Virus record (IMG/VR): IMGVR_UViG_3300005613_000001
Coordinates: 186,001-250,000 of that record
Direction: 5' to 3' (one strand)
DNA: 64,000 nucleotides
Position numbers and translations under genes: made by a program. Each line of letters opens with the position of its first letter. Position 1 is the first letter of the stretch. Positions 42,114-59,869 of this stretch are shown in pieces. The notes beneath the pieces were generated by a model. The model saw only the letters and a list, made by a program, of their open reading frames with translations. It was not told where the DNA came from and did no database searches.

Positions 42114-43244
42114 ATGAAGGTACTAGTATCAGGCTGCTTCGATCTAATCCACAGCGGCCATATCCAATTTCTTAAAGAAGCCGCTGAATACGGCGATCTA
42201 TATGTCTCCATTGGATCAGATCAAACAATCCAAGAACTAAAAAATAGAACTCCCATCTATAACGAGCAAGAACGCCTCTTTATTATGGAGTCTATCAAAT
42301 ATATTAAAAAAGCTTTTATCGCTCAGGGGTCTGGGACACTAGATTTCTTAAACGAATTAAAACAATTAAAGCCAGGGGCGTTTGTGGTCAATTCTGATGG
42401 TCATTCCCAAGAAAAGGAAGACCTGTGCAAAGAGCTAAAAATTAAATATATTGTCCTCAATCGGTCCCCCTACAAAACTCTTCCCGCTCGCAGTACATCA
42501 AAATTGCTTGGCGAAATAGAAATGCCCTATCGTATTGATTTGGCAGGAGGCTGGCTGGATCAACCGTGGGTTTCCAATATGGGGCACGGGCCTGTTATCA
42601 CCATCTCATTAGAAGCCTCACATATTTTCTTTAGAAGAAGCGGAATGGCTACCTCCACCAGAGAAAAAGCCATTAAATTATGGGGCTCTGGGATTCCTTA
42701 TGGTGACTACGAAGAAAATGCAAAACTCCTATTTTCTTATGATAATTTCCCCGATAAAGAGTTTGTTTCTGGTTCTCAAGATACATTGGGAATTGTCATG
42801 CCAGGAGTTAATAAATTAGACTATTCCGGTAAGTATTGGCCGGAAGCTATAGAGTCTATTGTAGATGATGACACTGCGCGTTGGTTAGAAGACCACATTC
42901 GCTTAGTCCCCTTATATCCAAGACCAAAAGACTATTCTGTGCTGTCCAATACCAATATTAAAGAAGAATATGTTAGAGGTTTAGCCTTCAATGCCCACAA
43001 AGTTTGGAAAGCAATTGAATTAAAACATGCCAGCATGTTAGGGCTACACGTAGAAAAGTGTTTCGGTGCCCAAGTGGCTATGTTCCCCAATATGATAACT
43101 CATAGAATAGCCAAAATAATCAAAAAATACAGAAATAAAATATTGGGAGTTAAAATATCAGGGGCGGGTGGGGGCGGATATCTAATCTTCATCACCGATC
43201 AAGATATAGAAAATTCAATTAAAATTAAAGTGAGAACTCAATAA
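42114..43244 (+). CDS. Cytidylyltransferase-like nucleotidyltransferase fused to a GHMP sugar kinase (HddA-like)
   Basis: SGCFDLIHSGH (HIGH motif); RIDLAGGWLD, RSGMATS, SGSQD, KISGAGGGG. Confidence 0.85.
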   Translation: MKVLVSGCFDLIHSGHIQFLKEAAEYGDLYVSIGSDQTIQELKNRTPIYNEQERLFIMESIKYIKKAFIAQGSGTLDFLNELKQLKPGAFVVNSDGHSQEKEDLCKELKIKYIVLNRSPYKTLPARSTSKLLGEIEMPYRIDLAGGWLDQPWVSNMGHGPVITISLEASHIFFRRSGMATSTREKAIKLWGSGIPYGDYEENAKLLFSYDNFPDKEFVSGSQDTLGIVMPGVNKLDYSGKYWPEAIESIVDDDTARWLEDHIRLVPLYPRPKDYSVLSNTNIKEEYVRGLAFNAHKVWKAIELKHASMLGLHVEKCFGAQVAMFPNMITHRIAKIIKKYRNKILGVKISGAGGGGYLIFITDQDIENSIKIKVRTQ

Positions 43245-44153: not shown

Positions 44154-45539
44154 TTATATATCCTCAATGGGCACAGGATCAATATTATTAAACCTTAACT
44201 TCATTGAGCGACCGCCCCTTGATTCACTAAGGAAACGCGAGAAAAGAAGATCGTGCTTAATGGGATCAACGTCGGTAATACCCAAACAATAACAGGTCAA
44301 TGCCCCTACGGCTGATCCTCTTCCGGGGCCAACTGCCTCTGATCCATCTCCCCAGCCTAGTAATCTAGGGAAGGCAATTCTAGCCTCATCTGTCATCTGT
44401 TTTTGCATTAAGAAGTAAGTAGAGAATCCTTTTCGGCATATCAATTCATATTCTTCCTTAATCCGATTTAAATACCTATTTTCCGTGGGCAACCTTCTAG
44501 CTTTAACTCCCTCTATGATTACCTCTTTGAACATTTCATCAGCATCAGGAAACTGGGGAAGTTTAATACTACGGTCTAATTGTACGCCTTTTGCTTTCTC
44601 GCATATTACAACCGTATTTTGTTTAGCTTGTCTAAAGAGATCGTCAGGGATTACTTGGCTATACTTCTTGAGCCACATTTGGTTGAGTTCATCTTCTGAC
44701 TTCATCCAAAGGTTAGTATCCTGTAGTTCAAAGAAATCCGCATCAGGATTGGCTCTCATTTTCTCTTCAATTTCAGCCATTGTTGTGTTGGTTTGAAGCA
44801 TCAACATCAATCGCTGCATCAAAGCATCTTCTTCACGGCAATAGTGACAATCATTTGTGACAACGAGAGGAATGCCATACCTGTCGTGTGCTTTAATAAT
44901 AAATTTATCAAAAGGTGTTTGTTTGTCAAAATCCAAAAGCATCATTTCCAAGTAAAAATTATCTGGAAACATCTGCTGATATTTTTCAACCATTGCAAAT
45001 CCAGCTTCATCCCCACCCTCGCAATGAAAGCCATCAAATGCTTGTCCTATCTCGCCATTATAACAGCCTGACGAGAATACGATTCCCTCTTTGTATTTCA
45101 GTAATTGCTCATGATTCACACGGGGTCGCTTTGGACGACCGCCCTGACCATTAATCCAAGCCCAAGAACTTAAATTAACCAGATTTGCGTATCCAATCTC
45201 ATTATAAGCTATAGCTAATAAATGGAAGCTTTTACGAAGATAAAGCTTTTCATTCTCAGTGAGGTTAGATTGGAAATCAGCATACTCATCCTTATTCCTT
45301 ACACCGGGTTGCATTGGGTTGAGATATAATTCACATGCGAAAACAGGATGAATGTCGTGTTTTTCACAAGTCTTAATCTGACGGGGGATAACCCCCATTT
45401 GCCCGTGGTCCGATATACAAAGAAACTTCTGATTTACCTGCTGAGAGTATTCTGCGTACTCTTCAGGGTGAGCGTAGCCATCAAGAAGTGAGAAGTGGCT
45501 ATGGCGGTGAAGGTGCTCAAAACCCACAATATCAATCAC
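44154..45539 (-). CDS. dnaE: DNA polymerase III alpha (DnaE), N-terminal PHP-domain polypeptide of a split enzyme
   Basis: HLHRHSHFSLLDG, SDHG, ACELY, NDCHY, GPGRGSAVG, LGITDVDP, LFSRFL; ends before the PDxDxDF motif. Confidence 0.92.
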   Translation of the reverse strand: MIDIVGFEHLHRHSHFSLLDGYAHPEEYAEYSQQVNQKFLCISDHGQMGVIPRQIKTCEKHDIHPVFACELYLNPMQPGVRNKDEYADFQSNLTENEKLYLRKSFHLLAIAYNEIGYANLVNLSSWAWINGQGGRPKRPRVNHEQLLKYKEGIVFSSGCYNGEIGQAFDGFHCEGGDEAGFAMVEKYQQMFPDNFYLEMMLLDFDKQTPFDKFIIKAHDRYGIPLVVTNDCHYCREEDALMQRLMLMLQTNTTMAEIEEKMRANPDADFFELQDTNLWMKSEDELNQMWLKKYSQVIPDDLFRQAKQNTVVICEKAKGVQLDRSIKLPQFPDADEMFKEVIIEGVKARRLPTENRYLNRIKEEYELICRKGFSTYFLMQKQMTDEARIAFPRLLGWGDGSEAVGPGRGSAVGALTCYCLGITDVDPIKHDLLFSRFLSESRGGRSMKLRFNNIDPVPIEDI

Positions 45540-45605: not shown

Positions 45606-45899
45606 ATGAAAGAAAAATGGTGGCATTCAATTTGGAAATGGTGGGTACTCATTCACTCAGCGGACATCATGACTACGGAAGGTATGTTGGATGTAATCAA
45701 CCACATGGAAGAACAACCTCATGCGGAAGAAGAACAACCTCATTTAGTTTCAGATTTAGCAGCCGTTTCTGCTGACTTCTTCCACTCTTCAAAGGCCGCG
45801 ACTATCTTTCTAGCCTCATCATCCATAGTTTTTAGTTCTTTATTAAATGCTTCAAACTTAGCCTTGAATTCATCCTTCATGGCTTTCTTTTTAGTGTGA
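45606..45899 (+). CDS. Possible small Trp-rich protein overlapping the opposite-strand gene
   Basis: TACATA box 5 nt before the ATG; last 160 nt antisense to 45740-45964. Confidence 0.3.
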   Translation: MKEKWWHSIWKWWVLIHSADIMTTEGMLDVINHMEEQPHAEEEQPHLVSDLAAVSADFFHSSKAATIFLASSSIVFSSLLNASNLALNSSFMAFFLV

Positions 45900-45964
45900 A
45901 TTTCAGCTATCTTCTGCGAAAATTCTACGTACTTGTCTGATAGGAAAATATCAATGTCTGACAT
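45740..45964 (-). CDS. Small coiled-coil protein
   Basis: Abuts the clpP stop; K/E-rich helix. Confidence 0.6.
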   Translation of the reverse strand: MSDIDIFLSDKYVEFSQKIAEIHTKKKAMKDEFKAKFEAFNKELKTMDDEARKIVAAFEEWKKSAETAAKSETK

Positions 45965-46690
45965 TTATCTCTCCAATCTTACTTTCTTGTTAATTCTAAT
46001 CTTGTCTAACGTCTCATAACCGGGCCAGCCCAAAACACAATCTGCGAAGCCGTAATAAACAGCTTTCTCGGCATCCAACCACCAATCGCCACGCTCTTGC
46101 ATCTTCCTTGCCAAAAATGCCATCACTTTATCTTCAGTAAGTGTTTTATAGCGATTCTGAAAGTGTTCCCCATTTATACACCTTTTCGCATAAATACGCA
46201 ACATTCTTTCTGCTGCTTTTTTAGAAGCTTCTGCTGCGGACATATATGCTAAATAATGATCTTCATTTCCCTCAGAACCATAATGAATCATAAAATCCGA
46301 GTCAGGCATCATCACTCTTTTGCTAGCCGCCTGTAAAATTAAACTACTCATTGAACGAGCATGAGCATATGCTAGGATAGTCACAGGTGATTTAGCGAAT
46401 TCAATCGCATTATACATCCCCATCCCATCATTCCAGTTGCCGCCGAAGGTATGCATGTGGACGAGAATATTGGCTTGCCCCTCTTGATCCAGAATACGCA
46501 TGTTCTTTTCAAAAGTCGTCGCCATTCTGTATTCAACGCCAGGCTCTTCACTATCACCTGATCCGTAGTACCCGTGGAGAAAAATCTCCCTGGTAAATAC
46601 GTTGACATTATGATGGTGAGCATCTGTTAAAATCTGCTCGATCTTAGACCCAGAGTGTTTCGGAGTTAATTTAGGGGGAGCCATAATCAC
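45965..46690 (-). CDS. clpP: ClpP-family serine protease
   Basis: HTFGG, ARSMSSLILQA (Ser), FMIH (His), DWWLDAEKAVYYGFAD. Confidence 0.8.
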   Translation of the reverse strand: MIMAPPKLTPKHSGSKIEQILTDAHHHNVNVFTREIFLHGYYGSGDSEEPGVEYRMATTFEKNMRILDQEGQANILVHMHTFGGNWNDGMGMYNAIEFAKSPVTILAYAHARSMSSLILQAASKRVMMPDSDFMIHYGSEGNEDHYLAYMSAAEASKKAAERMLRIYAKRCINGEHFQNRYKTLTEDKVMAFLARKMQERGDWWLDAEKAVYYGFADCVLGWPGYETLDKIRINKKVRLER

Positions 46691-46748
46691 CTTTAAATAG
46701 AACCTATTTAATGTAGTAGAGCCGCCCCAAAAGATTGCCTGACTTTAC

Positions 46749-48383
46749 CTATGTATTGGCTATGAAACGACTTACATTCGGCTCAGCCCATTTATTTTCG
46801 TACTCATCACGCGACATTACACGCACATTGTCTTCAGACTTGGGATCGTCACATATATAAACAATCTCCTGATTGTCACCGTCTCTTGTGGATAATAAAA
46901 CAGAGTTCTTCCAAATATTACAAATTGAAACCATAACGGCTCTTGCATAAGGCTCATGTAGTGGTCTGCCGTCCCATGTGTGTTCTAACAAAAATGTTCC
47001 ACGACCACGATGGTTTGGATCAACCAAACGAATATGAGGCTGTCCACCATTCAAATAACTCTTAAGAAGCTTCTTTTTAATTTGTTGATAATCCTTACTG
47101 ACTATGACATACTCGCCCTTTGGGGTTTTTTCCCACTCAAAGAATTCATTCTCATTACAAAAATCTTCTGTAAAGAATTCGGAAATAGCCATAAAGTCAT
47201 CATAGCACTTTCTGACTTCAAAAATCTTCTCTTTCCCTAAACCCAACTCTTTATCCCAATCTTCTCTTTCTTTTAAATTGTCACATGATTCGTACTCTTC
47301 TCCAAACCTTCCTTTATTCCACCTATCTTCTATATCTTGGAATATTTGGAATCCTAATTTGTATGGATTCAAAGAATACTTGCCACCCATAACCATCATT
47401 CTAGCCTTGGCATATTCTACTATACCGCAGTCTTCACCTTCCTGCCCCAAAGCTGCCATTCCGTTGCAAGCCAAAACTTCATAATCAACCTTAGAAGCCC
47501 AGCCCTCATTCATCATCTTGGTTCTAATTTGGGGAGAAAAATACTCCGCCTCCTCATGAAGCATGGCAATAATATCCGCCTGCCATTGTTTAAGGGGCGC
47601 ATTGTCTCTGAGATAGCCTAAAATATCTCGGGAAGGAGAAGTAAACAATTCTAATTGTTCGGCAATTTCAGCCTTCTTTATTCTCTCTTGCTCCTTCTTC
47701 TTCCACGCCTCCGTATTAATCCAATCTTCCATATAATCCCGTTCCTCATCAACTTTGAGGCGGCGGGCGTTATGGTATCTCCTTTTGTCTTTAAATTCTG
47801 TCTTCTTTTTATGCGTTTGCTTAGTTTTAGCAGGATCAATTAGATTCTCTAGCCTTAGAACATGATCAATAAACTCCATCACTCGTTCTTTGCCCCACCG
47901 AGCCATATACTTTCTAATTCTCATACCATTATTTGCCATTTTGTTCATCATATTAGTATCGGTATGAGAAAAATAAACATTGTTCTTGAAGAAGTCATTA
48001 TGTCCTAGAGCATGTGCAACCACCATCACATTATCAACAAAAGTATTACTGCTAAGACAATAGATGTAGCAAGGGTTGGTATTAATAACCAACTCCGCGA
48101 TACGGCGACTTCCAATGTCATATCCTCTTTGGAGTTCTTCGTATTCCATTCCAAATTTCCAGTGAGGATACCTAACAGGGAACCCATAATATGCTGCAAT
48201 TTCACTAATTTCGTCATCTCGCAACACTTCAACTACGGCAGGATAAAAGTCACAACCGTAATCCCTAACCCCTTGAAAAATCTTAGGGAGTTGTTTTTTA
48301 AGCTCTTCCGGCAAGCTTGCACCAGGAACAGTATTGTCCCCGATAAGCAATGACGATCCCATCAATGATCTTAAACTTGGCAT
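46749..48383 (-). CDS. spoVR: SpoVR (YcgB) family protein
   Basis: GFPVRYPHWKFG, AELVIN, VVAHALGHNDFF, MNEGWAS, NPYKLG. Confidence 0.92.
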   Translation of the reverse strand: MPSLRSLMGSSLLIGDNTVPGASLPEELKKQLPKIFQGVRDYGCDFYPAVVEVLRDDEISEIAAYYGFPVRYPHWKFGMEYEELQRGYDIGSRRIAELVINTNPCYIYCLSSNTFVDNVMVVAHALGHNDFFKNNVYFSHTDTNMMNKMANNGMRIRKYMARWGKERVMEFIDHVLRLENLIDPAKTKQTHKKKTEFKDKRRYHNARRLKVDEERDYMEDWINTEAWKKKEQERIKKAEIAEQLELFTSPSRDILGYLRDNAPLKQWQADIIAMLHEEAEYFSPQIRTKMMNEGWASKVDYEVLACNGMAALGQEGEDCGIVEYAKARMMVMGGKYSLNPYKLGFQIFQDIEDRWNKGRFGEEYESCDNLKEREDWDKELGLGKEKIFEVRKCYDDFMAISEFFTEDFCNENEFFEWEKTPKGEYVIVSKDYQQIKKKLLKSYLNGGQPHIRLVDPNHRGRGTFLLEHTWDGRPLHEPYARAVMVSICNIWKNSVLLSTRDGDNQEIVYICDDPKSEDNVRVMSRDEYENKWAEPNVSRFIANT

Positions 48384-49612
48384 TATAATCCCTGAACTTG
48401 AACTTTAATTTTTTGTCTCCCCAGAAGGTCTTTGATTGCCTTCTGGATTCCTTCATTTCTCTCATCTTCACTCATAGATGGAGAACCATACCCGAGCGTA
48501 AAGCCCTTCTGTTTTTCTTCAGGGCCGACTCCTGTAAGCCTCACTTGCTCCCCGTCTAAATAACCTTCTTCAACCTTCTTGTGTACAAACTGTTTTAAGC
48601 TGCCCTCGTAATTCCAAGGTAGAACTTGGGTTATTCCTACAAAATTGGCTATATTGGGAGGAAACTTCTCTTTGATAACTTGACAAAACCTATCATTATC
48701 ATTATCCCAATTTTCACCATCAGAAAAGTAAAATAGGTAAATGTTCCACTTCTCGGGAGGAAAACGATATTTTAATTGTTTAGCAATCAAACTTAATGCT
48801 GATGAGCATTTAGTCCCGCCTCCATAACGATACTTATAGAATTTCTCCTCATCTACCTCTTGAGCTTCTGTATCATGTACGAAGTAACACCGTTCTGTTT
48901 TCTTATAGAAACTACGAATCCAAACATCAATCCACCAAGACATATCAGATACAATATCACATTTAAAATCATTCATTGAGTATGAACAATCTCTTGCAAA
49001 AAAGATAACCGCATTGCTAGATGGCTTCTTCAACACTTTGTATTGCCTATACCTAAAATCGCTGTTTATAGGCGTAATCATCCTTACCTTTTCGACCATT
49101 CCAGGTATTGCGTGCAGCTTATCCGCCTCCCCTACTTGCACCAGCCTTTGATAAGCCTTCATGAGTGTGCGTTTCATATGTCGTAGAGAATGGGGGCCTG
49201 TTAATGAAATGTCATTATACTTATACTCAGTTTCCTCAAAGGTCTGATTTTCCTTTGGTTTAAGATTAGGAAGCTGAAGCTCATCTTGCATGAATTTTAA
49301 GATGTGTTCCAAATCAATTTGGAGTTCAATTCCTTCATTGTGTTGATCTCCTGGCTTGTTGCCTTTCCCTGGCTGTGGGTCACGACCAATCACATCTCCT
49401 GGTTTGCCGGGGCCTCTCCCAACCCCTATTTTATTATCCCCGTATTTAAACCGAGGAATAGCAATCCTATCGATTGGGATGCCAATTTTACCACCCTTAG
49501 CCCTTTGGCGAAATATTGTGCCTTTTGACATGTATTTGCGTATAGCTTTGCGGGCGCGACCTTCCACAACATCCCTAAAGTGTTTGTGGTCTTCTTCTAC
49601 TCTTCTTGGCAT
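48383..49612 (-). CDS. yeaH: YeaH/YhbH (DUF444) vWA-domain protein
   Basis: ELQLPNLKPK, RDCSYSM, GGGTKCSSA, WNIYLFYFSDGENW. Confidence 0.92.
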   Translation of the reverse strand: MPRRVEEDHKHFRDVVEGRARKAIRKYMSKGTIFRQRAKGGKIGIPIDRIAIPRFKYGDNKIGVGRGPGKPGDVIGRDPQPGKGNKPGDQHNEGIELQIDLEHILKFMQDELQLPNLKPKENQTFEETEYKYNDISLTGPHSLRHMKRTLMKAYQRLVQVGEADKLHAIPGMVEKVRMITPINSDFRYRQYKVLKKPSSNAVIFFARDCSYSMNDFKCDIVSDMSWWIDVWIRSFYKKTERCYFVHDTEAQEVDEEKFYKYRYGGGTKCSSALSLIAKQLKYRFPPEKWNIYLFYFSDGENWDNDNDRFCQVIKEKFPPNIANFVGITQVLPWNYEGSLKQFVHKKVEEGYLDGEQVRLTGVGPEEKQKGFTLGYGSPSMSEDERNEGIQKAIKDLLGRQKIKVQVQGL

Positions 49613-49626
49613 TTCCTTGTCCTTTT

Positions 49627-49690
49627 AAAAAAAGGGCGTGATCTCTCTGTATAATCAAGGATGAAATATAAAAATCGAGAGACCACGCCC
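49627..49690 (-). terminator. Large-loop hairpin with a U7 tract between prkA and yeaH
   Basis: GGGCGTG.TCTCTC / GAGAGA.CACGCCC stem followed by TTTTTTT on the minus strand. Confidence 0.55.
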
Positions 49691-49699
49691 AAACCCTAT

Positions 49700-51787
49700 C
49701 TATTCATCTTCTTCCGCTAAATTTCCCCTCGCAAAAATACTCCCAACATGATCCAATACATCGGAGGCAGACTTTTCATTGTAACCAAAATCTTTAATGA
49801 GCCTCGTCTTAATAGCATCGATCTTCTCTTGTAGGTCAGGATCAACAACAGCAGCACCGCTAACATTTAATGCACTCAACTTAATGTGATCCTTTGTATC
49901 CTCAAACAATTTAGCTTGAAGTGCTTTCTTGAGTTCGGGGTTGGAGTCCCAAGTGAATTTCTTCCCTTTATTCGCCAAATCACCCATGAACGCTGCTAAT
50001 GTAACTCTGAAGTCCTCAGCACCCGTACCTGGAATATTGATCTTCTCTTCAATGCTTCTCATCAACTGCTCATTGGGCTCTTCCTCCCTACCAGTATAAG
50101 GATTTAACACCTTTGATTCATTAATGGAAGCCATCATATTATCAATATAATTGCTGCACAATCTGACAATTGCAGTCTTATCCGACACAAGGGCTTTCTG
50201 AACTTCATTCTTCAATATATCATCCAATTCTTTAATAGCTAAATCAGCACATTCTACATATCGCTTCAACCTCTCTTTATCACTATACAAAGAATTGTGC
50301 TTCAAGCCTGATTTGAGTTCATTCATCACCATAAAGGGATTTACATAATCGTAATTATCACTCAGGCAATTGGAAATCTTATCCTGAACGTATCGGGCAC
50401 TAATCCCACCAACCATACCCTCTTCGTCCTGCTTCTCCTTAATTTCCTTAACCTTATCCTCAGTCCATCCAGGCATAGCCCGACCGTCGTATAATTTGAC
50501 CTTCTTGACCAAATCGCCAATCTCCTCATTATCTTTGAGGCGGCTTAAAATGGCGAATAAGCCCGCAATTTCCAAGGTATGTGGAGCCACATGCTGCTTT
50601 ACTTTGCCTTCGCCATAATCCTGTTCATAGACCTTCATCTCCTGTGACCATTCAAGCAGATAAGGCACATCAATCTTAAAGGTTCGGTCACGCAACGCCT
50701 CCATAAATTGATCTTCCTGCAATTTAACAAATTCAGGATTATTGGTGTGCCCAAGAAGAACTGTATCAATACCAATCTGGGGGAATTTCTTAGGCTTGAT
50801 TTGCTGCTCTTGGGTAGCACCTAACAAGTCATAAAGGAATTCTTTTTGAAGCTTTAAGATTTCAATGAACTCCACCATTCCCCTAGAACCAACACAAAAT
50901 TCCCCATCAAAATTAAATGCTCGGGGATCGGAGTCACTACCAAAGTGGGCAATCTTGCTCCAATTGATATCTCCGGTTAGTTCCGTGGAGTCTTGATTTT
51001 TTTCATCCTTGGGCTGGAAGGTTGCAATGCCCACACGATCAGCTTCCGAGTGTACCTTTCTAATCACCCTAATGTGACCGTCTAACACTTTTTGAAGATC
51101 GCCATTGTAACGGTTCAATAATTCCTTCATGTACTTCTTACACCGGGGATTTAACGAACCCATAATCCTCAAACCATAAAGCCCAATCCTGTCTTCCTCA
51201 GGGGTTAATTCATGCAAGCGATTATTCAATCCACCCAAAACCTCTTGTTGTAATTCCGCAGGGAGCAACTTCAAAGGTTCATCGTTCATTGGGCATTCAT
51301 CTACATCATTTGTAGCAATGCCCTTCTGTCCCGTAGGAAGATCAACCCACTTAAATGTATACCAAGCCCCATCATCCGTGCGGGAGTATCTTTCTAACCC
51401 TCTTTTTAAGAGGCGGCAGATAGTGGATTTTGAAGACCCAACAGGTCCGTGGAAAAGTAAAATTCTTTTCTCAGGACCATACCCCCCAGCAGCACCACGA
51501 ATGAATCTAACAAAATTATTTAAAGTTTCCTCAAGTCCAAAAATGGGGATCTCTGGATCGTCAAAGAAGTGATAATTGGTATATGTGTGACGATACTTCT
51601 GAAACTTAGAAGTCCCCCCTGCCATTATCATGTCGTATATTCTTTGGTAGGCTGTGCGGATAAGGCGGGGTCGGTCATTCACCCGATTAAGGTACTCAGA
51701 GAATGACATCTCCTCATTCAACGCACAAAACTGTTCTCGATTAAATTTGCCAAGTAGTTGCGAATAGCTGTTATTTTCAGGTTCCAT
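49700..51787 (-). CDS. prkA: PrkA/YeaG AAA+ serine kinase-like ATPase
   Basis: LFHGPVGSSKST, DPRAFNFDGE, EFIEILK, LLGHTNNPEF, EALRDR, GISARY. Confidence 0.93.
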   Translation of the reverse strand: MEPENNSYSQLLGKFNREQFCALNEEMSFSEYLNRVNDRPRLIRTAYQRIYDMIMAGGTSKFQKYRHTYTNYHFFDDPEIPIFGLEETLNNFVRFIRGAAGGYGPEKRILLFHGPVGSSKSTICRLLKRGLERYSRTDDGAWYTFKWVDLPTGQKGIATNDVDECPMNDEPLKLLPAELQQEVLGGLNNRLHELTPEEDRIGLYGLRIMGSLNPRCKKYMKELLNRYNGDLQKVLDGHIRVIRKVHSEADRVGIATFQPKDEKNQDSTELTGDINWSKIAHFGSDSDPRAFNFDGEFCVGSRGMVEFIEILKLQKEFLYDLLGATQEQQIKPKKFPQIGIDTVLLGHTNNPEFVKLQEDQFMEALRDRTFKIDVPYLLEWSQEMKVYEQDYGEGKVKQHVAPHTLEIAGLFAILSRLKDNEEIGDLVKKVKLYDGRAMPGWTEDKVKEIKEKQDEEGMVGGISARYVQDKISNCLSDNYDYVNPFMVMNELKSGLKHNSLYSDKERLKRYVECADLAIKELDDILKNEVQKALVSDKTAIVRLCSNYIDNMMASINESKVLNPYTGREEEPNEQLMRSIEEKINIPGTGAEDFRVTLAAFMGDLANKGKKFTWDSNPELKKALQAKLFEDTKDHIKLSALNVSGAAVVDPDLQEKIDAIKTRLIKDFGYNEKSASDVLDHVGSIFARGNLAEEDE

Positions 51788-51822
51788 ATTTATATCCTTG
51801 TTAGTGGGGCTTCAACAACCGG

Positions 51823-51851
51823 ATTATATTAAAATAATAGGGTTAGGTCAA
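51823..51851 (-). promoter_or_regulatory. Sigma-70-type promoter for the prkA-yeaH-spoVR operon
   Basis: TTGACC-17 nt-TATAAT on the minus strand. Confidence 0.75.
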
Positions 51852-51856
51852 GAATA

Positions 51857-52195
51857 TTATTTAACTTCTCCAAAATGTTTGCCGCTGGAGATGTCATCTA
51901 TGTTGTTATATGGGGTTGGACCTACGTGTGACAACTCTTCGGCCATTTTTCGTTGATCTCTTACACCACCATCTTTTTCCATTTGGTGATGGTAACGAAG
52001 ATCATGAGAAGCTGCGTATTTTTTAGTGCCTTCGGGGTTGGTGAAGGTCATCGTACACGCAGAAACCTTAAGAATTTTTGCTTTAGAATTACATTCAGGA
52101 CAACAAACTTTAGAATACTTGCCAGTTTCATCATAAGCAGCCAACTCTTCATAGTCATTGTCGCATTTCTTGCATTTAAACTCATACATCGGCAT
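51857..52195 (-). CDS. FmdB-family zinc-ribbon protein
   Basis: MPMYEFKCKKC...CPECNS. Confidence 0.8.
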   Translation of the reverse strand: MPMYEFKCKKCDNDYEELAAYDETGKYSKVCCPECNSKAKILKVSACTMTFTNPEGTKKYAASHDLRYHHQMEKDGGVRDQRKMAEELSHVGPTPYNNIDDISSGKHFGEVK

Positions 52196-52493
52196 TTTTC
52201 TTGTCCTTTTCCTTCACTTCTATAAGCAATTTATCAAACACCATATACGCCTTGCCAATCATTCTTAACTTGGTTTTAAAAGAGTAGAATCTCCACCAAA
52301 TAGACTTCTCTAACATTTTAATTGATGTTTGAAGTAGCTTTAAATTCAAATTATTTTCCTCTATCTCTAGCTGCATCGCGTGGAGAAGTTCTTCTTTATA
52401 CCCTTCTTCATCTAAAAATTCCCCCTCATCATCAAAAAACCTATCAACCTCATGCCTAAATTCATCATTATCTTCATAATCAAAATTTCTCAT
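52182..52493 (-). CDS. Hypothetical protein
   Basis: Probable start ATG 52493. Confidence 0.5.
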   Translation of the reverse strand: MRNFDYEDNDEFRHEVDRFFDDEGEFLDEEGYKEELLHAMQLEIEENNLNLKLLQTSIKMLEKSIWWRFYSFKTKLRMIGKAYMVFDKLLIEVKEKDKKNADV

Positions 52494-52495
52494 GT

Positions 52496-52993
52496 TTATC
52501 CTATCATTGAATAGATGGGGTACAACTTTCTCCACAATTCTAATATCTTCCATTCATTCACTGCCATGCTTTCCTTCCGAAAGTTCGCCACCCGGATAAA
52601 GGGAGCCTCAATGCTATTTATCCATTCGGCTAATATAAAATTACCGCATCTCTCATTATAACGCGCAAAGGTAGCAACCTCATCAGATGTGGCTTCACAA
52701 ACCTCAAACCCCCTCCACTCCCTCACGGCCATCGTATCACAATTTATTTCATAGTCATATTCATGAGTGGCAGTAGGATTAACATAATAAAATTCTAACT
52801 CAAGCTTGACACACCATTTAAACAATTCTATTGGAGAAGATTTTGATTTATCACACAAAATCATAAACTTGGCATCAGGAAGGTTTTTTAATAAAGAATA
52901 CCACGACGCCATAACCATCCAGTTATGATGGGGTAAATAGTTACACTTAATCGCAATGGTAACACCATCCCCTGTCGGGCTAATTTGCTTCAT
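52496..52993 (-). CDS. Hypothetical protein
   Basis: ORF in operon. Confidence 0.55.
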   Translation of the reverse strand: MKQISPTGDGVTIAIKCNYLPHHNWMVMASWYSLLKNLPDAKFMILCDKSKSSPIELFKWCVKLELEFYYVNPTATHEYDYEINCDTMAVREWRGFEVCEATSDEVATFARYNERCGNFILAEWINSIEAPFIRVANFRKESMAVNEWKILELWRKLYPIYSMIG

Positions 52994-56601: not shown

Positions 56602-56831
56602 CAAATTTCCCGCTGTGGGACGTAGGGCGCGTAGAAATAGCCCATATCAAGATAAGATGGACCCCTATAACTCCCAAATAGCCCAGGATAGCTATGTACG
56701 CCACATTCACGACTGCTCTCGCCCCACGTCGGCCAAACGCCACATTGGGGCACGCGGGTAAGATTAGGAAGATCCTCAGGATTAAATTGCATCATAGATG
56801 CAACATATAATTTAGCTGGCTTCTTCGACAT
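56601..56831 (-). CDS. Hypothetical protein
   Basis: 76-aa ORF overlapping the HD gene end. Confidence 0.35.
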   Translation of the reverse strand: MSKKPAKLYVASMMQFNPEDLPNLTRVPQCGVWPTWGESSRECGVHSYPGLFGSYRGPSYLDMGYFYAPYVPQREI

Positions 56832-57801
56832 AATGTTTCATCCCAATACTAGCGAAATACCAATCCTTATAGATATCAAAAGAATCTCTAAGCGGCTGGC
56901 CTAATTTCACATTTTCTTTGAGGCGAGCTTCTATTTTACCATTCCTGCTACTTATCAAATCTACGGCGCTCAAAATAGTCGCCTCTTGTGATTGTGTCGG
57001 CTTATAGCTTCCCCATTCAATTTTACCATGATGAGATGCTATCAAATGAATAACTTCATTAATGAAATCTTGTTCTAAACCCTCACTCTCACCTACACTC
57101 TTAACCAATTCCATTCCATAGAAAATGTGACCAATGGACTGCTCAGTAGCCAATTGATCTGCTAATCCCGCCTCTGTAATAAAATAGGTTTCAACTTTAC
57201 CTATATCGTGCAATATAGCTCCTGCGTATAGGACATCCCTATTGATGAAGCCATATGGTTCCTTACAACTTTCGTAAATCACCCTACATAAATCTAAAAC
57301 CTCAGCGGTGTGGACCAACAAACCGCCTGAATAATTATGATGAATTGTAGAGGCGGCGGGGCAGGACATCAACTTCTTTCTGTCCAGTTTAGAAAGGCAT
57401 TTATTCACAAAGTTATAGTGTTTCTCATCATCCCACAGGCTCTTATCAGAAATCAACTTCAAAGCCCATTTAAGCCGTTCAGGGTCAGCTTTTGGGAATT
57501 CGCAAAGTTCTTTCTCATCTTCAGGCAAGTCTTCTTTTGATATCCTATCAAAGCCAAGCGGAGAAATTACAATACTCTTATGGGTGGCTAGTTGATCTTT
57601 GAATTTGTTAATTCTGATTACATCATTCACATGGGGATAGTCGGGGTCTTTAGCCGCCTCTTTGTGTGCATCCCACATGTTTGCTTTAATTTGACCAGAA
57701 TTAGTCTTTATAAGCAAAGCATAGTAAAATCTATCCCCAGCTTTAGTAGGGCGAATACCTGTCTCTAACACCAGGGCATATAAGGGAGTTGGTAGAGCCA
57801 T
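56812..57801 (-). CDS. YhaM/Cbf1-like OB-fold + HD-domain nuclease
   Basis: IKANMWD OB region, HHNYSGGLLVHT, LHDIGKV, GHIFYG, SHHG. Confidence 0.8.
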   Translation of the reverse strand: MALPTPLYALVLETGIRPTKAGDRFYYALLIKTNSGQIKANMWDAHKEAAKDPDYPHVNDVIRINKFKDQLATHKSIVISPLGFDRISKEDLPEDEKELCEFPKADPERLKWALKLISDKSLWDDEKHYNFVNKCLSKLDRKKLMSCPAASTIHHNYSGGLLVHTAEVLDLCRVIYESCKEPYGFINRDVLYAGAILHDIGKVETYFITEAGLADQLATEQSIGHIFYGMELVKSVGESEGLEQDFINEVIHLIASHHGKIEWGSYKPTQSQEATILSAVDLISSRNGKIEARLKENVKLGQPLRDSFDIYKDWYFASIGMKHYVEEAS

Positions 57802-57868: not shown

Positions 57869-59062
57869 TCAAAACCTACCAAAATCTAACAGTGCTAAAT
57901 TTTGCGTTTGATTCTCACTTCTCCGACGACCACCTGTTGTCAAAACAACATGAACCTTATCATCTCCATGAGCGTTGATTTCCGTCGAACTGACGGTATT
58001 TTTTAGATTACATGCAGCATTTAAGTCTCGATCCATCTCAAGACCACAGCTACACTTGTATGTTCTCTCGGATAGTTTCAAGTCTTTCTTGACCTTGCCA
58101 CAACCCGAACACATCTTACTTGAAGGAAAGAACCGATCCACAAACCTAACCTCAATACCAGACCAACCAGCCTTGTATTCCACCTGCCTACGAAACTCTC
58201 GCATGTTGGCATCGTGAATAGCTTTTGCTAAATTATGGTTTTTGGTCATGCCGCTTACATTCAGATTTTCCATCACAATGATCTGAGGTTGCTTGGTTTT
58301 TACAATCTCTGAACTTGCTTTGTGAGTGGCATCTTTCCTAATGTTCACGACCCGTCGCCACAACCTTGCGATCTTCGTTCGTAGTTTCTTTCTTCGCTTG
58401 CTTTTCTTGTCTATCTTCTTTGCCAGCCTTCGCTGAAAGTATTTGATCTTGCTTTCCAGCTTGGATAATGCTTTGGGATTATCATATTGGCTTCCATCAG
58501 AAGTGGTTGCCAACGTCTTGATGCCCAAGTCGATCCCCAATACATCACCTGTATTTTTATGTTCTTCAACTTCCTCACGAACCAGAACCGAGACATACCA
58601 GCGACCCGCTTGCTCGCTCACCGTTACTGACAAAATGTGTTGGTCAGTTGGGATATATCCCACTTCTTTCAATCTAAGCCAACCGAGTCTCGGTAACTTG
58701 ATTCGTTTGTTTTCAACTTTGATTGATCCAGTCAAACGGAAAGAGCCGATGCCTTTGTTTCTGGACTTGAACTTAGGGAATCCTGCTCGCTTCTCAAAGA
58801 AGTTCTTGAACGCCGTCTGTAAGTCTCTGAGGCTTTCCTGCATCGCACACTTGGAAACCTCATACATGAAGGCAAATTGTCCCTTTTTCTCCACATTGAG
58901 TTCTCGGTGCAGTTGCATGGCGTTTGGCTTAGACTCTTTCTCTTGGATGCGTCCTAACGCCCAATTCCAAGCCTTTCTCGCACAACCAGCGTTCTTCATC
59001 AGCAAAGTGCGTTGCTTATTATTTGGATCAAGTTCTGTTTTGTAAGCCTTCTGGATCAACAT
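57869..59062 (-). CDS. tnpB: TnpB RNA-guided endonuclease
   Basis: KAYKTEL, FPKFKS, GIDLG, VMENL, DRDLNAA RuvC residues; CSGC...CSC zinc finger. Confidence 0.95.
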   Translation of the reverse strand: MLIQKAYKTELDPNNKQRTLLMKNAGCARKAWNWALGRIQEKESKPNAMQLHRELNVEKKGQFAFMYEVSKCAMQESLRDLQTAFKNFFEKRAGFPKFKSRNKGIGSFRLTGSIKVENKRIKLPRLGWLRLKEVGYIPTDQHILSVTVSEQAGRWYVSVLVREEVEEHKNTGDVLGIDLGIKTLATTSDGSQYDNPKALSKLESKIKYFQRRLAKKIDKKSKRRKKLRTKIARLWRRVVNIRKDATHKASSEIVKTKQPQIIVMENLNVSGMTKNHNLAKAIHDANMREFRRQVEYKAGWSGIEVRFVDRFFPSSKMCSGCGKVKKDLKLSERTYKCSCGLEMDRDLNAACNLKNTVSSTEINAHGDDKVHVVLTTGGRRRSENQTQNLALLDFGRF

Positions 59063-59703
59063 GCAGCCTCCTGCTGTTGTTGTTCCAGCAACTTCTTTTG
59101 CTTTCTTATCTCGGCTGAACGTCTCCCGTATATGCGATTACTGAATGAAGACATGAGCGAAAGCATATCTTCAACAAGTTCTGCCTCATAACTCTTGCCT
59201 AAGACTTCGCCAATCCATTCGATCTCAACATCATGGCTGGAAAAGAACTGATTGAGAAAGTCAAAGTTGAAACGAGTCAAACGGTCTTTATGCTCAACTA
59301 CAACCTTGTCAATTTCTCTTTTGGAAACCAGCTTGAATAGTTGCTTGAGTTTAGATCGGGTATCACACATGCCCGATCCCACTTCCTCAAACGATTTTAC
59401 AACATGGTATCCTTGTTTCGCACAATAGGTCAGGACTCGCCCGTTCTGTCGTTCTAGGTCGCCCTTCTGCTTTTGTTCGTGAGAACTGACTCTGCAATAG
59501 CTGGCTACTCGAATTATATCTTTCTTTTTCTGTTTTTGGTATTCACCACAGAGTTTTTGAATGTCGGTCAAGCGATACCTGCGGTGATTTCCACAGGTCT
59601 TGACTGCTTCCAGTTTACCTTCTTCATCCCAAGTTCTCAGAGTATTGATATGGACTCCGAGTAAGTCTGCGGCTTTACCGATGCTCAATAGTTTCTGGTT
59701 CAT
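59056..59703 (-). CDS. tnpA: IS607 TnpA serine recombinase
   Basis: MerR-type HTH (SIGKAADLLGVHINTLRTWD), YCRVSS, VVEHKDRLTRF, ELVEDM; start ATG 59703. Confidence 0.93.
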   Translation of the reverse strand: MNQKLLSIGKAADLLGVHINTLRTWDEEGKLEAVKTCGNHRRYRLTDIQKLCGEYQKQKKKDIIRVASYCRVSSHEQKQKGDLERQNGRVLTYCAKQGYHVVKSFEEVGSGMCDTRSKLKQLFKLVSKREIDKVVVEHKDRLTRFNFDFLNQFFSSHDVEIEWIGEVLGKSYEAELVEDMLSLMSSFSNRIYGRRSAEIRKQKKLLEQQQQEAAC

Positions 59704-59869
59704 TCTCCAATAGTTCCTTTTCACGGAACACATGGAGCCATTCATCGTATTGTTTCTGAAACTCCTCAACTGTGGGAACTTCATCAAGTTCAAACATCAT
59801 AGGATGGACAGTGCCATCTGCTGTTTCAAACTCAGTTTTGGTTACTTTGACGATTTTTCGGCTCAACAT
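59675..59869 (-). CDS. Small acidic ORF upstream of tnpA inside the IS
   Basis: GAGAGG RBS; TACATA box at 59889-59894; overlaps the tnpA start. Confidence 0.55.
   Translation of the reverse strand: MLSRKIVKVTKTEFETADGTVHPMMFELDEVPTVEEFQKQYDEWLHVFREKELLENEPETIEHR

What the first reader, a model, noticed from the sequence alone, without database searches (positions are those of the whole stretch)
45965..52195. Complete prkA-yeaH-spoVR operon followed by clpP in a phage
Seen: intact AAA+ / vWA / SpoVR genes under a consensus sigma-70 promoter, followed by a ClpP gene with its own late box, and preceded by an FmdB zinc ribbon. Established: this triad is a conserved bacterial/archaeal dormancy and nitrogen-starvation module with poorly defined biochemistry; YeaG and PrkA have been linked to protein degradation; AAA+/vWA pairs remodel proteins. 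Inference: the phage controls host dormancy, and the clpP linkage suggests the triad is a substrate-selecting unfoldase feeding a protease, a testable clue to the module's function.
Basis: partly seen in the sequence, partly recalled or inferred. Interest (0 to 1): 0.7.

Follow-up and report, generated by a model that had tools for sequence, protein, structure and literature searches.

The report
Phage-borne PrkA–YeaH–SpoVR module plus ClpP
A 527-kb phage carries an intact copy of the bacterial PrkA/YeaH/SpoVR starvation module followed by a divergent ClpP peptidase, but the ClpP is an often-lost add-on found only in this phage group, so it says little about how the module works.

Summary
On the minus strand lie an FmdB-type zinc ribbon, PrkA, YeaH, SpoVR and a divergent ClpP-family peptidase with its Ser-His-Asp triad. 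An 11/12 sigma-70-like site precedes prkA. The window belongs to a 527-kb phage record.

- **ClpP linkage in relatives:** 80 related huge-phage loci all carry prkA, and yeaH and spoVR wherever the locus reaches them. ClpP follows SpoVR in 31, is absent from an intact slot in 30, and 19 are cut. On the PrkA tree this needs at least 10 changes.
- **Complete relative:** a complete 572-kb relative has the triad and ClpX but no ClpP.
- **Linkage elsewhere:** ClpP adjoins PrkA in 1 of 80 bacterial loci and in no independent phage lineage.
- **Other partners and proteases:** the phage encodes a bona fide ClpX with an IGF loop, and a T4-type prohead protease.
- **SpoVR itself:** its model resembles zincin metallopeptidases and it has invariant HxxxH and NEGWA motifs. 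In relatives, inteins sit exactly at invariant sites.

Best reading: this is a phage copy of the YeaG (SpdA)-type starvation-proteolysis module, with ClpP as a dispensable accessory. It is a new member of a known kind, of moderate interest.

The parts
52496..52993 (-). orf165, a conserved upstream ORF of unknown function
   Evidence: No Pfam or PHROG hit. A homologue sits in the same position in most related loci.
52182..52553 (-). orf123, a conserved upstream ORF of unknown function that overlaps the start of fmdB
   Evidence: No significant family hit. It is syntenic in many related loci.
51857..52195 (-). FmdB-type zinc-ribbon protein (112 aa)
   Evidence: PF09723 E 3.6e-8 and phrog_1076. 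The CxxC...CPxC pattern is visible. A homologue was found in nearly all related phage loci, mostly directly upstream of prkA (in six loci elsewhere, on the other strand), and in none of 80 bacterial loci.
51823..51851 (-). Sigma-70-like promoter TTGACC-17-TATAAT upstream of prkA
   Evidence: An 11/12 match in the 69-nt FmdB-PrkA gap. The genome holds 30 such sites against about 13 expected. Many relatives have a TATAAT-type -10 element at the same place, but not all.
49700..51787 (-). PrkA/YeaG-family AAA+ ATPase with a PrkA C-terminal domain (695 aa)
   Evidence: PF08298 E 1.6e-78 and PF06798 E 6.6e-68. Walker A is GPVGSSKS. It is 60-69% identical to 80 huge-phage loci and 50-54% identical to PrkA of Myxococcota, Planctomycetota and Bdellovibrionota MAGs.
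48383..49612 (-). YeaH/YhbH (DUF444) vWA protein (409 aa)
   Evidence: PF04285 E 1.7e-65. NCBIfam PRK05325/YhbH hits fall below their cut-offs. The MIDAS motif DCSYS / GGGT / SDGE is visible in the translation.
46749..48383 (-). SpoVR/YcgB-family protein (544 aa) with a predicted zincin-like fold
   Evidence: PF04293 E 1.1e-107 and PF24755. Invariant residues are H74, E97, N101, H124, H128, E278 and N292-E293-G294-x-A296. The AlphaFold2 model has pLDDT 81.6. By my reading of the entry titles, 46 of the 50 best VIA-align matches are zincin-fold proteins, with Z up to 9.9.
46704..46711 (-). TTAAATAG box 19 nt upstream of the clpP start; possibly a phage promoter element
   Evidence: Read from the sequence. 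(C/T)TAAATA recurs upstream of clpP in L010, L011, L016, L018, L029 and L068. TAAATAG is 2.4-fold enriched in intergenic DNA of the genome.
45965..46684 (-). Divergent ClpP-family serine peptidase (239 aa from the ATG; a GTG at 46690 is an alternative start)
   Evidence: PF00574 E 3.8e-19. It has 609 homologues in metagenomes, and the two long contigs I looked up (633 kb and 242 kb) are huge-phage-like. S111/H134/D200 are conserved. It has a ClpP fold with a target-normalised TM-score of about 0.8. It scores below the NCBIfam ClpP and head-protease cut-offs.
45740..45964 (-). orf74, a small lysine- and glutamate-rich ORF that abuts the clpP stop codon
   Evidence: Only weak OmpH-like hits. A homologue is kept downstream of SpoVR in many loci that have lost clpP, for example L035, L045 and L054.
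44154..45539 (-). N-terminal piece of DNA polymerase III alpha (PHP plus NTPase domain); the conserved downstream neighbour, given for context
   Evidence: PF02811 E 6.6e-32 and PF07733 E 8.2e-23. It is syntenic in most related loci.

Best explanation
**What it is.** The block is a huge-phage copy of the bacterial PrkA(YeaG/SpdA)-YeaH-SpoVR(YcgB) stress module, kept intact under strong selection.

**How the module most likely works (inferred).**
- PrkA is an AAA+ motor.
- YeaH is its vWA/MIDAS adaptor.
- SpoVR is a zincin-like metal-dependent partner.
- Together they switch the infected cell into the YeaG-type 'starvation-induced protein degradation' state. Stable host cytoplasmic proteins are turned over, yielding amino acids and energy for a long, costly infection in nutrient-poor hosts.

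**Where ClpP fits (inferred).**
- The ClpP-family gene downstream is a catalytically competent but dispensable accessory peptidase.
- It may have its own promoter box.
- It more probably works with the phage's own ClpX, or the host's, than with PrkA.
- It shares the neighbourhood because of one ancestral gene order, not because it is the triad's proteolytic chamber.

**Shown here:** gene identities, motifs, folds, synteny, the pattern of losses, and the presence of ClpX and of a separate prohead protease.

**Inferred only:** the proteolytic role of the triad during infection, SpoVR catalysis, and ClpX-ClpP pairing.
For: **The triad is intact and conserved**
- Domains and motifs are intact.
- prkA is present in all 80 related huge-phage loci, and yeaH and spoVR wherever the locus reaches them, at 47-69% identity.
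- The catalytic-looking SpoVR residues are invariant across phage and bacterial sequences.
- Canonical Cys...His-Asn/Ser-Thr inteins sit exactly at N101|T102 and NEGWA296|S297 in relatives. Inteins typically lodge in functionally critical sites.
- Phages acquired the triad several times, to judge from how far apart the copies are: phiYS40 at 31% and RsoM2USA at 25% PrkA identity, plus three 630-640-kb uncultured phages (PMC8504454).

**The module is tied to proteolysis**
- YeaG is required for bulk, non-specific cytoplasmic proteolysis in starved E. coli (PMC13684143).
- B. subtilis PrkA shows ATP-dependent casein hydrolysis (PMC9512850).
- The SpoVR model gives zincin metallopeptidase folds in 46 of the top 50 structural matches, by my reading of the titles.

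**ClpP is an accessory**
- 31 loci have it and 30 lack it in an intact slot, with at least 10 changes on the PrkA tree.
- The complete 572-kb relative has the triad and ClpX but no PF00574 match.
- LR756511.1 has only a 19%-identical paralogue about 240 kb away.
- Only 1 of 80 bacterial loci has a ClpP-family ORF within 10 kb.
- The phage ClpX is an NCBIfam equivalog (575 bits against a cut-off of 359) with a QIGFVH loop.
- A T4-type prohead protease lies elsewhere in the genome.
Against: - There is no expression or biochemical data for any phage copy, and no RNA run holds the locus.
- B. anthracis PrkA had negligible protease activity in vitro (PMC13001217).
- SpoVR lacks the catalytic Glu of HExxH: the window has HALGH and the consensus is HVYGH. 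Foldseek found no significant PDB match, and the VIA-align Z-scores of 8-10 are only moderately above the level that tool calls common. SpoVR may therefore be a non-catalytic or non-peptidase zincin.
- The ClpX-ClpP pairing got no support from the complex prediction. That result is a non-verdict.
- The position aligned with ClpP Tyr62 in the IGF-docking pocket is a nearly invariant His76. The identification of that pocket residue rests on my own knowledge.
- The host is unknown.
- Where this ClpP subfamily occurs, it is almost always beside SpoVR. Some functional tie therefore cannot be excluded.
Confidence: 0.5

Rival explanations
1. A PrkA AAA+ ring, with YeaH selecting substrates, docks on the neighbouring ClpP-like barrel and feeds it unfolded proteins. 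The gene linkage would then reveal the triad's missing protease.
For: - The genes are co-directional and lie 64 nt apart, with no terminator-like site between spoVR and clpP.
- The arrangement looks ancestral in the clade, because the ClpP-carrying rows include the basal branches.
- This ClpP subfamily sits beside SpoVR in nearly every case examined.
- It is divergent from canonical ClpP, with a conserved N-terminal extension and His in place of the pocket Tyr62. A non-canonical partner is therefore conceivable.
- YeaG-dependent proteolysis has no identified protease (PMC13684143).
Against: - At least 10 changes of ClpP state occur on the tree while the triad is retained.
- A complete relative has the triad but no ClpP family member.
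- There is no linkage in 79 of 80 bacterial loci or in three independent phage lineages.
- No PrkA residue or indel co-varies with ClpP presence, and no conserved IGF-like loop was found.
- The phage has its own ClpX with an IGF loop.
- clpP has its own upstream box.
- SpoVR itself has a peptidase-like fold.
Confidence: 0.07
2. The triad is a regulatory device rather than a degradative one. PrkA/YeaH/SpoVR would reprogram host stress, dormancy or stationary-phase signalling. It might keep a starving or dormant host permissive, or override the host's own YeaG pathway. Bulk proteolysis would not be the point, and ClpP would be unrelated.
For: - YeaG was first described as a stress kinase that affects survival and metabolic heterogeneity under nitrogen starvation (PMC4664914).
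- B. anthracis PrkA shows pleiotropic effects on sporulation gene expression without detectable protease activity (PMC13001217).
- The PrkA C-terminal kinase-like domain is conserved.
- Viral spoVR genes are abundant in stressed oxycline viromes (PMC8940887).
Against: - Kinase activity of PrkA was not reproducible (PMC9512850, PMC13001217).
- The 2026 E. coli work ties YeaG directly to degradation flux (PMC13684143).
- The zincin-like SpoVR fold points to hydrolysis.
Confidence: 0.22
3. The module serves the phage's own proteins. It would be an AAA+/vWA chaperone pair, like the MoxR-vWA systems, that helps assemble or process the very large virion. SpoVR and/or ClpP would trim structural proteins.
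For: - MoxR AAA+-vWA pairs, some fused to a metallopeptidase, occur in jumbo phages and in an archaeal virus, where they are linked to virion assembly (PMC7824862).
- The PHROG hits of the ClpP-like protein are mostly 'head maturation protease' families.
Against: - The block sits among replication and nucleotide-sugar genes, not structural genes.
- The genome has a dedicated T4-type prohead protease elsewhere.
- The ClpP-like protein scores 58 bits against the 120-bit cut-off of the ClpP-related head-maturation model, and it is dispensable in complete relatives.
- The triad is a cellular stress module with no known role in assembly.
Confidence: 0.08

Closest known systems
E. coli YeaG(SpdA)-YeaH plus YcgB; B. 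subtilis PrkA-YhbH plus SpoVR
   Same: - The three Pfam families and domain orders are the same: AAA_PrkA plus PrkA_C, DUF444/vWA, and SpoVR plus SpoVR_C.
- Walker A, MIDAS and the SpoVR invariant residues are conserved.
- The prkA-yeaH-spoVR gene order matches that in the closest bacterial loci.
   Different: - This copy is encoded by a phage.
- It is only 50-54% identical to the nearest bacterial PrkA and scores below all NCBIfam equivalog cut-offs.
- It is preceded by an FmdB-type zinc ribbon and followed by a ClpP-like gene and orf74. Neither the zinc ribbon nor ClpP is seen next to bacterial PrkA (0 of 80 and 1 of 80 loci).
Triads in cultured phages: Thermus phages phiYS40 and TMA (YS40_056/057/059) and Ralstonia jumbo phage RsoM2USA (ORF28-30)
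   Same: These are phage-borne PrkA, DUF444 and SpoVR genes clustered together (PMC8504454). They are also represented in PHROGs 22605, 19072 and 35217.
   Different: - They are only 25-31% identical to the window's PrkA, so they are probably separate acquisitions.
- The gene order differs in phiYS40.
- There is no FmdB and no ClpP within 7 kb.
Canonical ClpXP (E. coli ClpP, PDB 1TYF and 6WR2)
   Same: - The ClpP fold, including the long handle helix, with a target-normalised TM-score of about 0.8.
- The Ser-His-Asp triad.
- A ClpX with a zinc finger and an IGF loop encoded in the same genome.
   Different: - About 25% identity, and far below the ClpP equivalog cut-offs (36 against 308 bits).
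- A conserved extra N-terminal segment of about 45 residues replaces the axial loops.
- His stands at the position of pocket Tyr62.
- clpX lies about 170 kb from clpP.
- Pairing is untested, because the complex prediction gave no verdict.
MoxR AAA+ / vWA-metallopeptidase pairs of jumbo phages (Iyer et al. 2021, PMC7824862)
   Same: The logic is the same: an AAA+ ATPase, a vWA adaptor and a zincin-type domain encoded together in large phages.
   Different: - The AAA+ clade differs (PrkA, not MoxR).
- The zincin-like domain is a separate protein (SpoVR) that lacks the HExxH glutamate.
- That system was proposed for virion assembly, whereas this one derives from a cellular starvation module.

Membership tests
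PrkA/YeaG family | N-terminal AAA_PrkA domain with a Walker A P-loop, plus a C-terminal PrkA domain | tested here: met
   PF08298 scores 264.7 bits and PF06798 scores 229.6 bits, each against a cut-off of 25. GPVGSSKS is invariant in the alignment.
PrkA/YeaG family | Equivalog-level similarity to E. coli YeaG (NCBIfam PRK15455) | tested here: not met
   208 bits against a cut-off of 576. It is a distant subfamily, closest to the long PrkA of Myxococcota and Planctomycetota.
PrkA/YeaG family | ATP-dependent proteolysis or support of starvation-induced proteolysis | not testable with these tools
   Only literature on the cellular homologues is available (PMC13684143, PMC9512850, PMC13001217).
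YeaH/YhbH (DUF444) vWA proteins | DUF444 domain with a vWA MIDAS motif, encoded next to prkA | tested here: met
   PF04285 scores 222 bits. DCSYS / GGGT / SDGE are visible. The gene starts 87 nt downstream of prkA.
SpoVR/YcgB family | SpoVR and SpoVR_C domains with the family's invariant residues | tested here: met
   PF04293 scores 360.8 bits and PF24755 scores 29.5 bits. H74, E97, N101, H124, H128 and NEG292-294 are invariant in 39-41 sequences.
Zincin (gluzincin) metallopeptidases, considered for SpoVR | Zincin fold: a beta-sheet, an active-site helix and a ligand helix | tested here: met
   By my reading of the entry titles, 46 of the 50 best VIA-align matches are zincin-fold proteins (M1, M3, M4, M9, M30, M32, M36, M61, YbeY, DUF885), with Z from 5 to 9.9. 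Foldseek found nothing, so support is moderate.
Zincin (gluzincin) metallopeptidases, considered for SpoVR | HExxH motif with a catalytic glutamate | tested here: not met
   The motif is H124-A-L-G-H128 in the window and HVYGH in the consensus, with no Glu after the first His. An NEGWA motif like the third-ligand motif of M1 peptidases is invariant, but its role is untested. That comparison rests on my own knowledge.
ClpP (peptidase S14) | CLP_protease domain, Ser-His-Asp triad and ClpP fold | tested here: met
   PF00574 scores 69.7 bits against a cut-off of 20.2. S111/H134/D200 are conserved. The fold matches solved ClpP with E about 1e-13 and a target-normalised TM-score of about 0.8.
ClpP (peptidase S14) | Equivalog-level ClpP with the canonical hydrophobic docking pocket for IGF loops | tested here: not met
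   TIGR00493 scores 36 bits against a cut-off of 308.6. The residue aligned with ClpP Tyr62 is the nearly invariant His76. The identity of the pocket residue rests on my own knowledge.
ClpXP system | A ClpX unfoldase with an IGF loop available to the peptidase | tested here: met
   A 427-aa ClpX lies at G000:62715-63998. It scores 575 bits on NF003745 against a cut-off of 359, and has a zinc finger and a QIGFVH loop.
ClpXP system | Physical ClpX-ClpP binding | tested here: inconclusive
   The complex prediction scored 0.01 and gave no verdict, which is evidence neither for nor against binding.
ClpP-related phage head-maturation protease | Meets the family model, sits in the head-gene module, and is the phage's prohead protease | tested here: not met
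   - NF045542 scores 58 bits against a cut-off of 120.
- The neighbours are spoVR and dnaE.
- A Peptidase_S77 prohead protease lies at G000:426292-426744.
- The gene is absent from a complete relative.

The most novel reading that the evidence does not exclude
The divergent ClpP is the original, dedicated peptidase chamber of a PrkA-YeaH-SpoVR machine. It has a remodelled docking pocket and a unique conserved N-terminal segment, and it is found almost only beside SpoVR in huge phages. Lineages that lost it would fall back on the host's ClpP or on SpoVR. If so, this phage block would expose the effector of YeaG/SpdA-dependent starvation proteolysis, which is still unidentified. A milder novel reading is that SpoVR/YcgB is itself that effector, as an atypical zincin hydrolase.
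Probability: 0.08. Interest if true: 0.85.

Novelty: new member of a known kind. Interest (0 to 1): 0.5.

Why it matters
- The PrkA/YeaG-YeaH-SpoVR triad is one of the most widespread bacterial modules whose biochemistry is still unclear. It has just been tied to starvation-induced bulk proteolysis in E. coli (PMC13684143).
- A large clade of huge phages keeps an intact copy, well over 100 metagenomic contigs. Inteins lodged at SpoVR's invariant motifs point to strong functional constraint.
- This suggests that these phages manipulate host protein turnover or starvation physiology, much as smaller phages recycle host DNA.
- The phage copies offer compact, divergent proteins for biochemistry.
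- The zincin-like fold of SpoVR gives a concrete, testable candidate for the module's hydrolytic component.
- The ClpP adjacency, which made the finding attractive, carries little mechanistic information.

Tried and rejected
- **Nucleotide search of phage records:** megablast of the region against 50,697 phage records found nothing. Relatives are detectable only at the protein level.
- **ClpP as the head-maturation protease:** rejected. The genome has an S77 prohead protease elsewhere, the gene is dispensable in a complete relative, it scores below the family cut-off, and it sits in a non-structural neighbourhood.
- **Complex prediction:** phage ClpX (residues 60-427) with two copies of ClpP-like scored 0.01 and gave no verdict. 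This is neither support nor evidence against binding. A PrkA hexamer with a ClpP heptamer exceeds the tool's size limit and was not attempted.
- **Foldseek searches with the SpoVR model:** the PDB search gave no significant match. AlphaFold DB clusters returned only SpoVR families, and the ESM Atlas returned only SpoVR clusters.
- **Sequence-profile searches with SpoVR:** a profile search of solved structures gave only one spurious weak hit. A Pfam scan of SpoVR pieces at E up to 10 showed no peptidase family.
- **Sequencing runs:** one marine DNA run holds 7% of the sampled words and no RNA run holds the locus, so expression and operon boundaries could not be examined.
- **PrkA features that track ClpP:** none were found.
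- **First structure job for SpoVR:** It was rerun without them.

Full report
**Observation**

The finding's coordinates hold exactly. The genes below lie on the minus strand.

| Gene | Coordinates | Evidence |
|---|---|---|
| FmdB-type zinc ribbon | 51857-52195 | PF09723, E 3.6e-8 |
| PrkA | 49700-51787 | AAA_PrkA E 1.6e-78; PrkA C-terminal domain E 6.6e-68 |
| YeaH/DUF444 | 48383-49612 | E 1.7e-65 |
| SpoVR | 46749-48383 | E 1.1e-107 |
| ClpP-family protein | 45965-46684 | PF00574, E 3.8e-19 |
| orf74 | 45740-45964 | abuts the clpP stop codon |

- The functional motifs are intact: Walker A GPVGSSKS in PrkA and the vWA MIDAS motif DCSYS/GGGT/SDGE in YeaH.
- The ClpP Ser111/His134/Asp200 triad is conserved in 32 homologues.
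- A TTGACC-17-TATAAT site (11/12) fills the FmdB-PrkA gap. The genome has 30 sites of at least 11/12 against about 13 expected, so sigma-70-type promoters are plausible here. Many relatives keep a TATAAT-type -10 element at the same place, but not all.
Similar (C/T)TAAATA boxes precede clpP in several relatives, and TAAATAG is 2.4-fold enriched in intergenic DNA. Its timing is unknowable from sequence.
- The window is positions 186001-250000 of a 527,112-bp virus record rated complete.

**Is the ClpP a head protease?**

No.
- The genome has a T4 gp21-type prohead protease (Peptidase_S77) 190 kb away.
- The ClpP-like protein scores below the ClpP-related head-maturation model (58 against 120 bits).
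- Its neighbours are spoVR and a dnaE fragment.
- A complete relative lacks any ClpP-family gene.
- Structurally it is a true ClpP fold that includes the handle helix. The model has pLDDT 89.7, and solved ClpPs match with E about 1e-13 and a target-normalised TM-score of about 0.8.
- It is nevertheless divergent. It shares about 25% identity with solved ClpPs and scores far below the ClpP equivalog cut-offs. It has a conserved extra N-terminal segment, and a nearly invariant His where canonical ClpP has pocket residue Tyr62.
- It belongs to a family of 609 metagenomic proteins. The two long contigs I looked up, of 633 kb and 242 kb, carry the same block and are huge-phage-like.

*Related huge phages*
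- Eighty IMG/VR loci have PrkA 60-69% identical to the window's, and each carries yeaH and spoVR wherever the locus reaches them.
- Most share the order orf165-orf123-fmdB-prkA-yeaH-spoVR-[clpP]-orf74-dnaE.
- ClpP occupies the slot after spoVR in 31 loci. It is absent from an intact slot in 30, and 19 loci are cut short.
- On a PrkA maximum-likelihood tree the ClpP-carrying rows include all basal branches. At least 10 changes of state are required, which suggests one ancestral arrangement with repeated loss.
- A complete 572-kb relative with terminal repeats has the triad and ClpX but no PF00574 match.
- LR756511.1 (595 kb) has only a 19%-identical ClpP paralogue about 240 kb from its triad.

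*Independent phage lineages*
- The phiYS40 and RsoM2USA loci have no ClpP within 7 kb of the triad.
- In LR745206.1 the ClpP and PrkA matches lie about 400 kb apart.

*Bacteria*
- In 80 PrkA loci with 10-kb flanks (Myxococcota, Planctomycetota, Bdellovibrionota, Chloroflexota and others, at 50-54% identity), yeaH and spoVR follow prkA in most.
- A ClpP-family ORF appears in only one locus, on the opposite strand and 5 kb away. FmdB appears in none.
- The ClpP profile used for this scan finds canonical ClpPs at E about 1e-18, so its sensitivity is adequate.

*PrkA itself*
- No PrkA column or indel distinguishes lineages with ClpP from those without.

The adjacency is therefore a single historical event in one clade. 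It is dispensable for the triad and carries little independent functional information.

**A canonical partner exists**

- The phage encodes a 427-aa ClpX at G000:62715-63998. It is an NCBIfam equivalog (575 bits against a cut-off of 359), with an N-terminal zinc finger and a QIGFVH (IGF) loop.
- ClpX is also present in both complete relatives examined, whether or not they carry the ClpP-like gene.
- A complex prediction of ClpX with two ClpP-like copies gave no verdict, so the pairing remains an inference.

**What the triad probably does**

- E. coli YeaG, renamed SpdA, is required for RpoS-dependent, largely non-specific degradation of stable cytoplasmic proteins during carbon starvation. This supplies amino acids and energy (PMC13684143).
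- B. subtilis PrkA hydrolyses casein in an ATP-dependent manner (PMC9512850).
- B. anthracis PrkA showed negligible protease or kinase activity in vitro (PMC13001217).
- The executing protease of the YeaG pathway is not identified.

SpoVR is a candidate for that role.
- An AlphaFold2 model of the phage SpoVR (pLDDT 81.6) found nothing with Foldseek.
- An exhaustive structural alignment returned zincin-fold proteins in 46 of the 50 best entries, by my reading of the titles. They include M1, M3, M4, M9, M30, M32, M36 and M61 peptidases, YbeY and DUF885, with Z up to 9.9.
- SpoVR has an invariant H124-x3-H128 on the helix that follows a small beta-sheet, and an invariant N292-E-G-W-A296 on a later helix.
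- From my own knowledge, that second motif recalls the NEGFA third-ligand motif of M1 gluzincins.
- The catalytic Glu of HExxH is missing, so SpoVR may be an atypical hydrolase or a pseudo-peptidase.
- I found no paper that holds both 'SpoVR' and 'zincin'.

Inteins support the importance of these sites.
- Many related phages carry one or two canonical inteins with LAGLIDADG endonucleases in SpoVR.
- They are inserted precisely at EMVIN|T and NEGWA|S. Each has Cys at its first position, ends in His-Asn, and is followed by Thr or Ser.

I therefore favour a phage-borne AAA+/vWA/zincin-like machine that imposes a YeaG-type protein-turnover state on the host. ClpP, with ClpX, would be an optional additional proteolytic tool.

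**Comparison with what is known, and novelty**

- Phage-borne triads are already annotated in Thermus phages and in RsoM2USA (PMC8504454), and they are represented in PHROGs.
- Viral spoVR has been counted as a 'sporulation' auxiliary gene in marine viromes (PMC8940887).
- Phage ClpP and ClpX have been noted in jumbo phages as probable anti-host tools (PMC7824862).
- What appears unreported is that a large huge-phage clade conserves fmdB-prkA-yeaH-spoVR(-clpP)-orf74, that SpoVR looks zincin-like, and that inteins mark its invariant motifs.
- This is a new member of a known kind. It is made more interesting by the 2026 link between YeaG and bulk proteolysis.

**Verdict**

The proteolysis theme is plausible, but the inference that the triad feeds ClpP is not supported.
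- Interest is 0.5.

Noticed in passing
L049:13280-17386 (related phage locus); also L016-L021, L024, L033/34, L044, L047, L050/51, L057-59, L066, L068, L069, L073, L080: SpoVR genes of many related huge phages are interrupted in frame by one or two inteins with LAGLIDADG endonucleases. The inteins are inserted exactly at the invariant motifs EMVIN|T and NEGWA|S. The window's own SpoVR has no intein. Intein-bearing SpoVRs also occur in bacteria.
   Followed up: yes
G000:C1:62715-63998 (L087:1180-2463, minus strand), outside the window: The phage encodes a bona fide ClpX with a zinc finger, an IGF loop and an NCBIfam equivalog score. Directly upstream is a 232-aa membrane protein with an HEYGH motif and a weak match to intramembrane metalloproteases (L087:2485-3183).
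   Followed up: partly
G000:C1:83055-84419 (L088:1003-2367), outside the window: A 454-aa AAA-type ATPase with a sub-threshold match to the MadB family (114.8 bits against a cut-off of 475).
   Followed up: no
window 57869-59793, minus strand: An IS607-like pair sits inside the phage genome: a serine resolvase with a MerR HTH domain (59056-59793) and a TnpB/OrfB_IS605, Cas12f-like protein (57869-59062).
   Followed up: no
window 44154-45539, minus strand: Only the PHP domain and the N-terminal part of DNA polymerase III alpha are encoded here (461 aa). The next ORFs have no family match. This piece is the conserved downstream neighbour of the block in most relatives, which suggests a split dnaE.
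   Followed up: no
L026:12298-13483 and L172:4128-4913 (relatives): The prkA-yeaH gap is a hotspot for variable cargo in relatives. Examples are a DUF6445 protein and a Methyltransf_24 protein. In the window the gap is only 87 nt.
   Followed up: partly
window 60781-62163 (minus strand) and 42114-43244 (plus strand): Two sugar-nucleotide genes flank the region: a PfkB kinase fused to a cytidylyltransferase (HldE-like), and a cytidylyltransferase with a GHMP-kinase C-terminal domain. An HD-domain protein lies at 56812-57801.
   Followed up: no
whole genome G000 (intergenic regions): The 8-mers CATATATA, TATATAAA and AATTGTAC(C) are 10- to 17-fold enriched within 80 nt upstream of genes. They are candidate phage-specific promoter elements distinct from the sigma-70-like sites.
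   Followed up: no
window 45690-45740, minus strand: Just after the orf74 stop codon, the sequence GAGGTTGTTCTTC occurs twice in tandem, 9 nt apart, within the 200-nt gap before dnaE. Its role is unknown.
   Followed up: no
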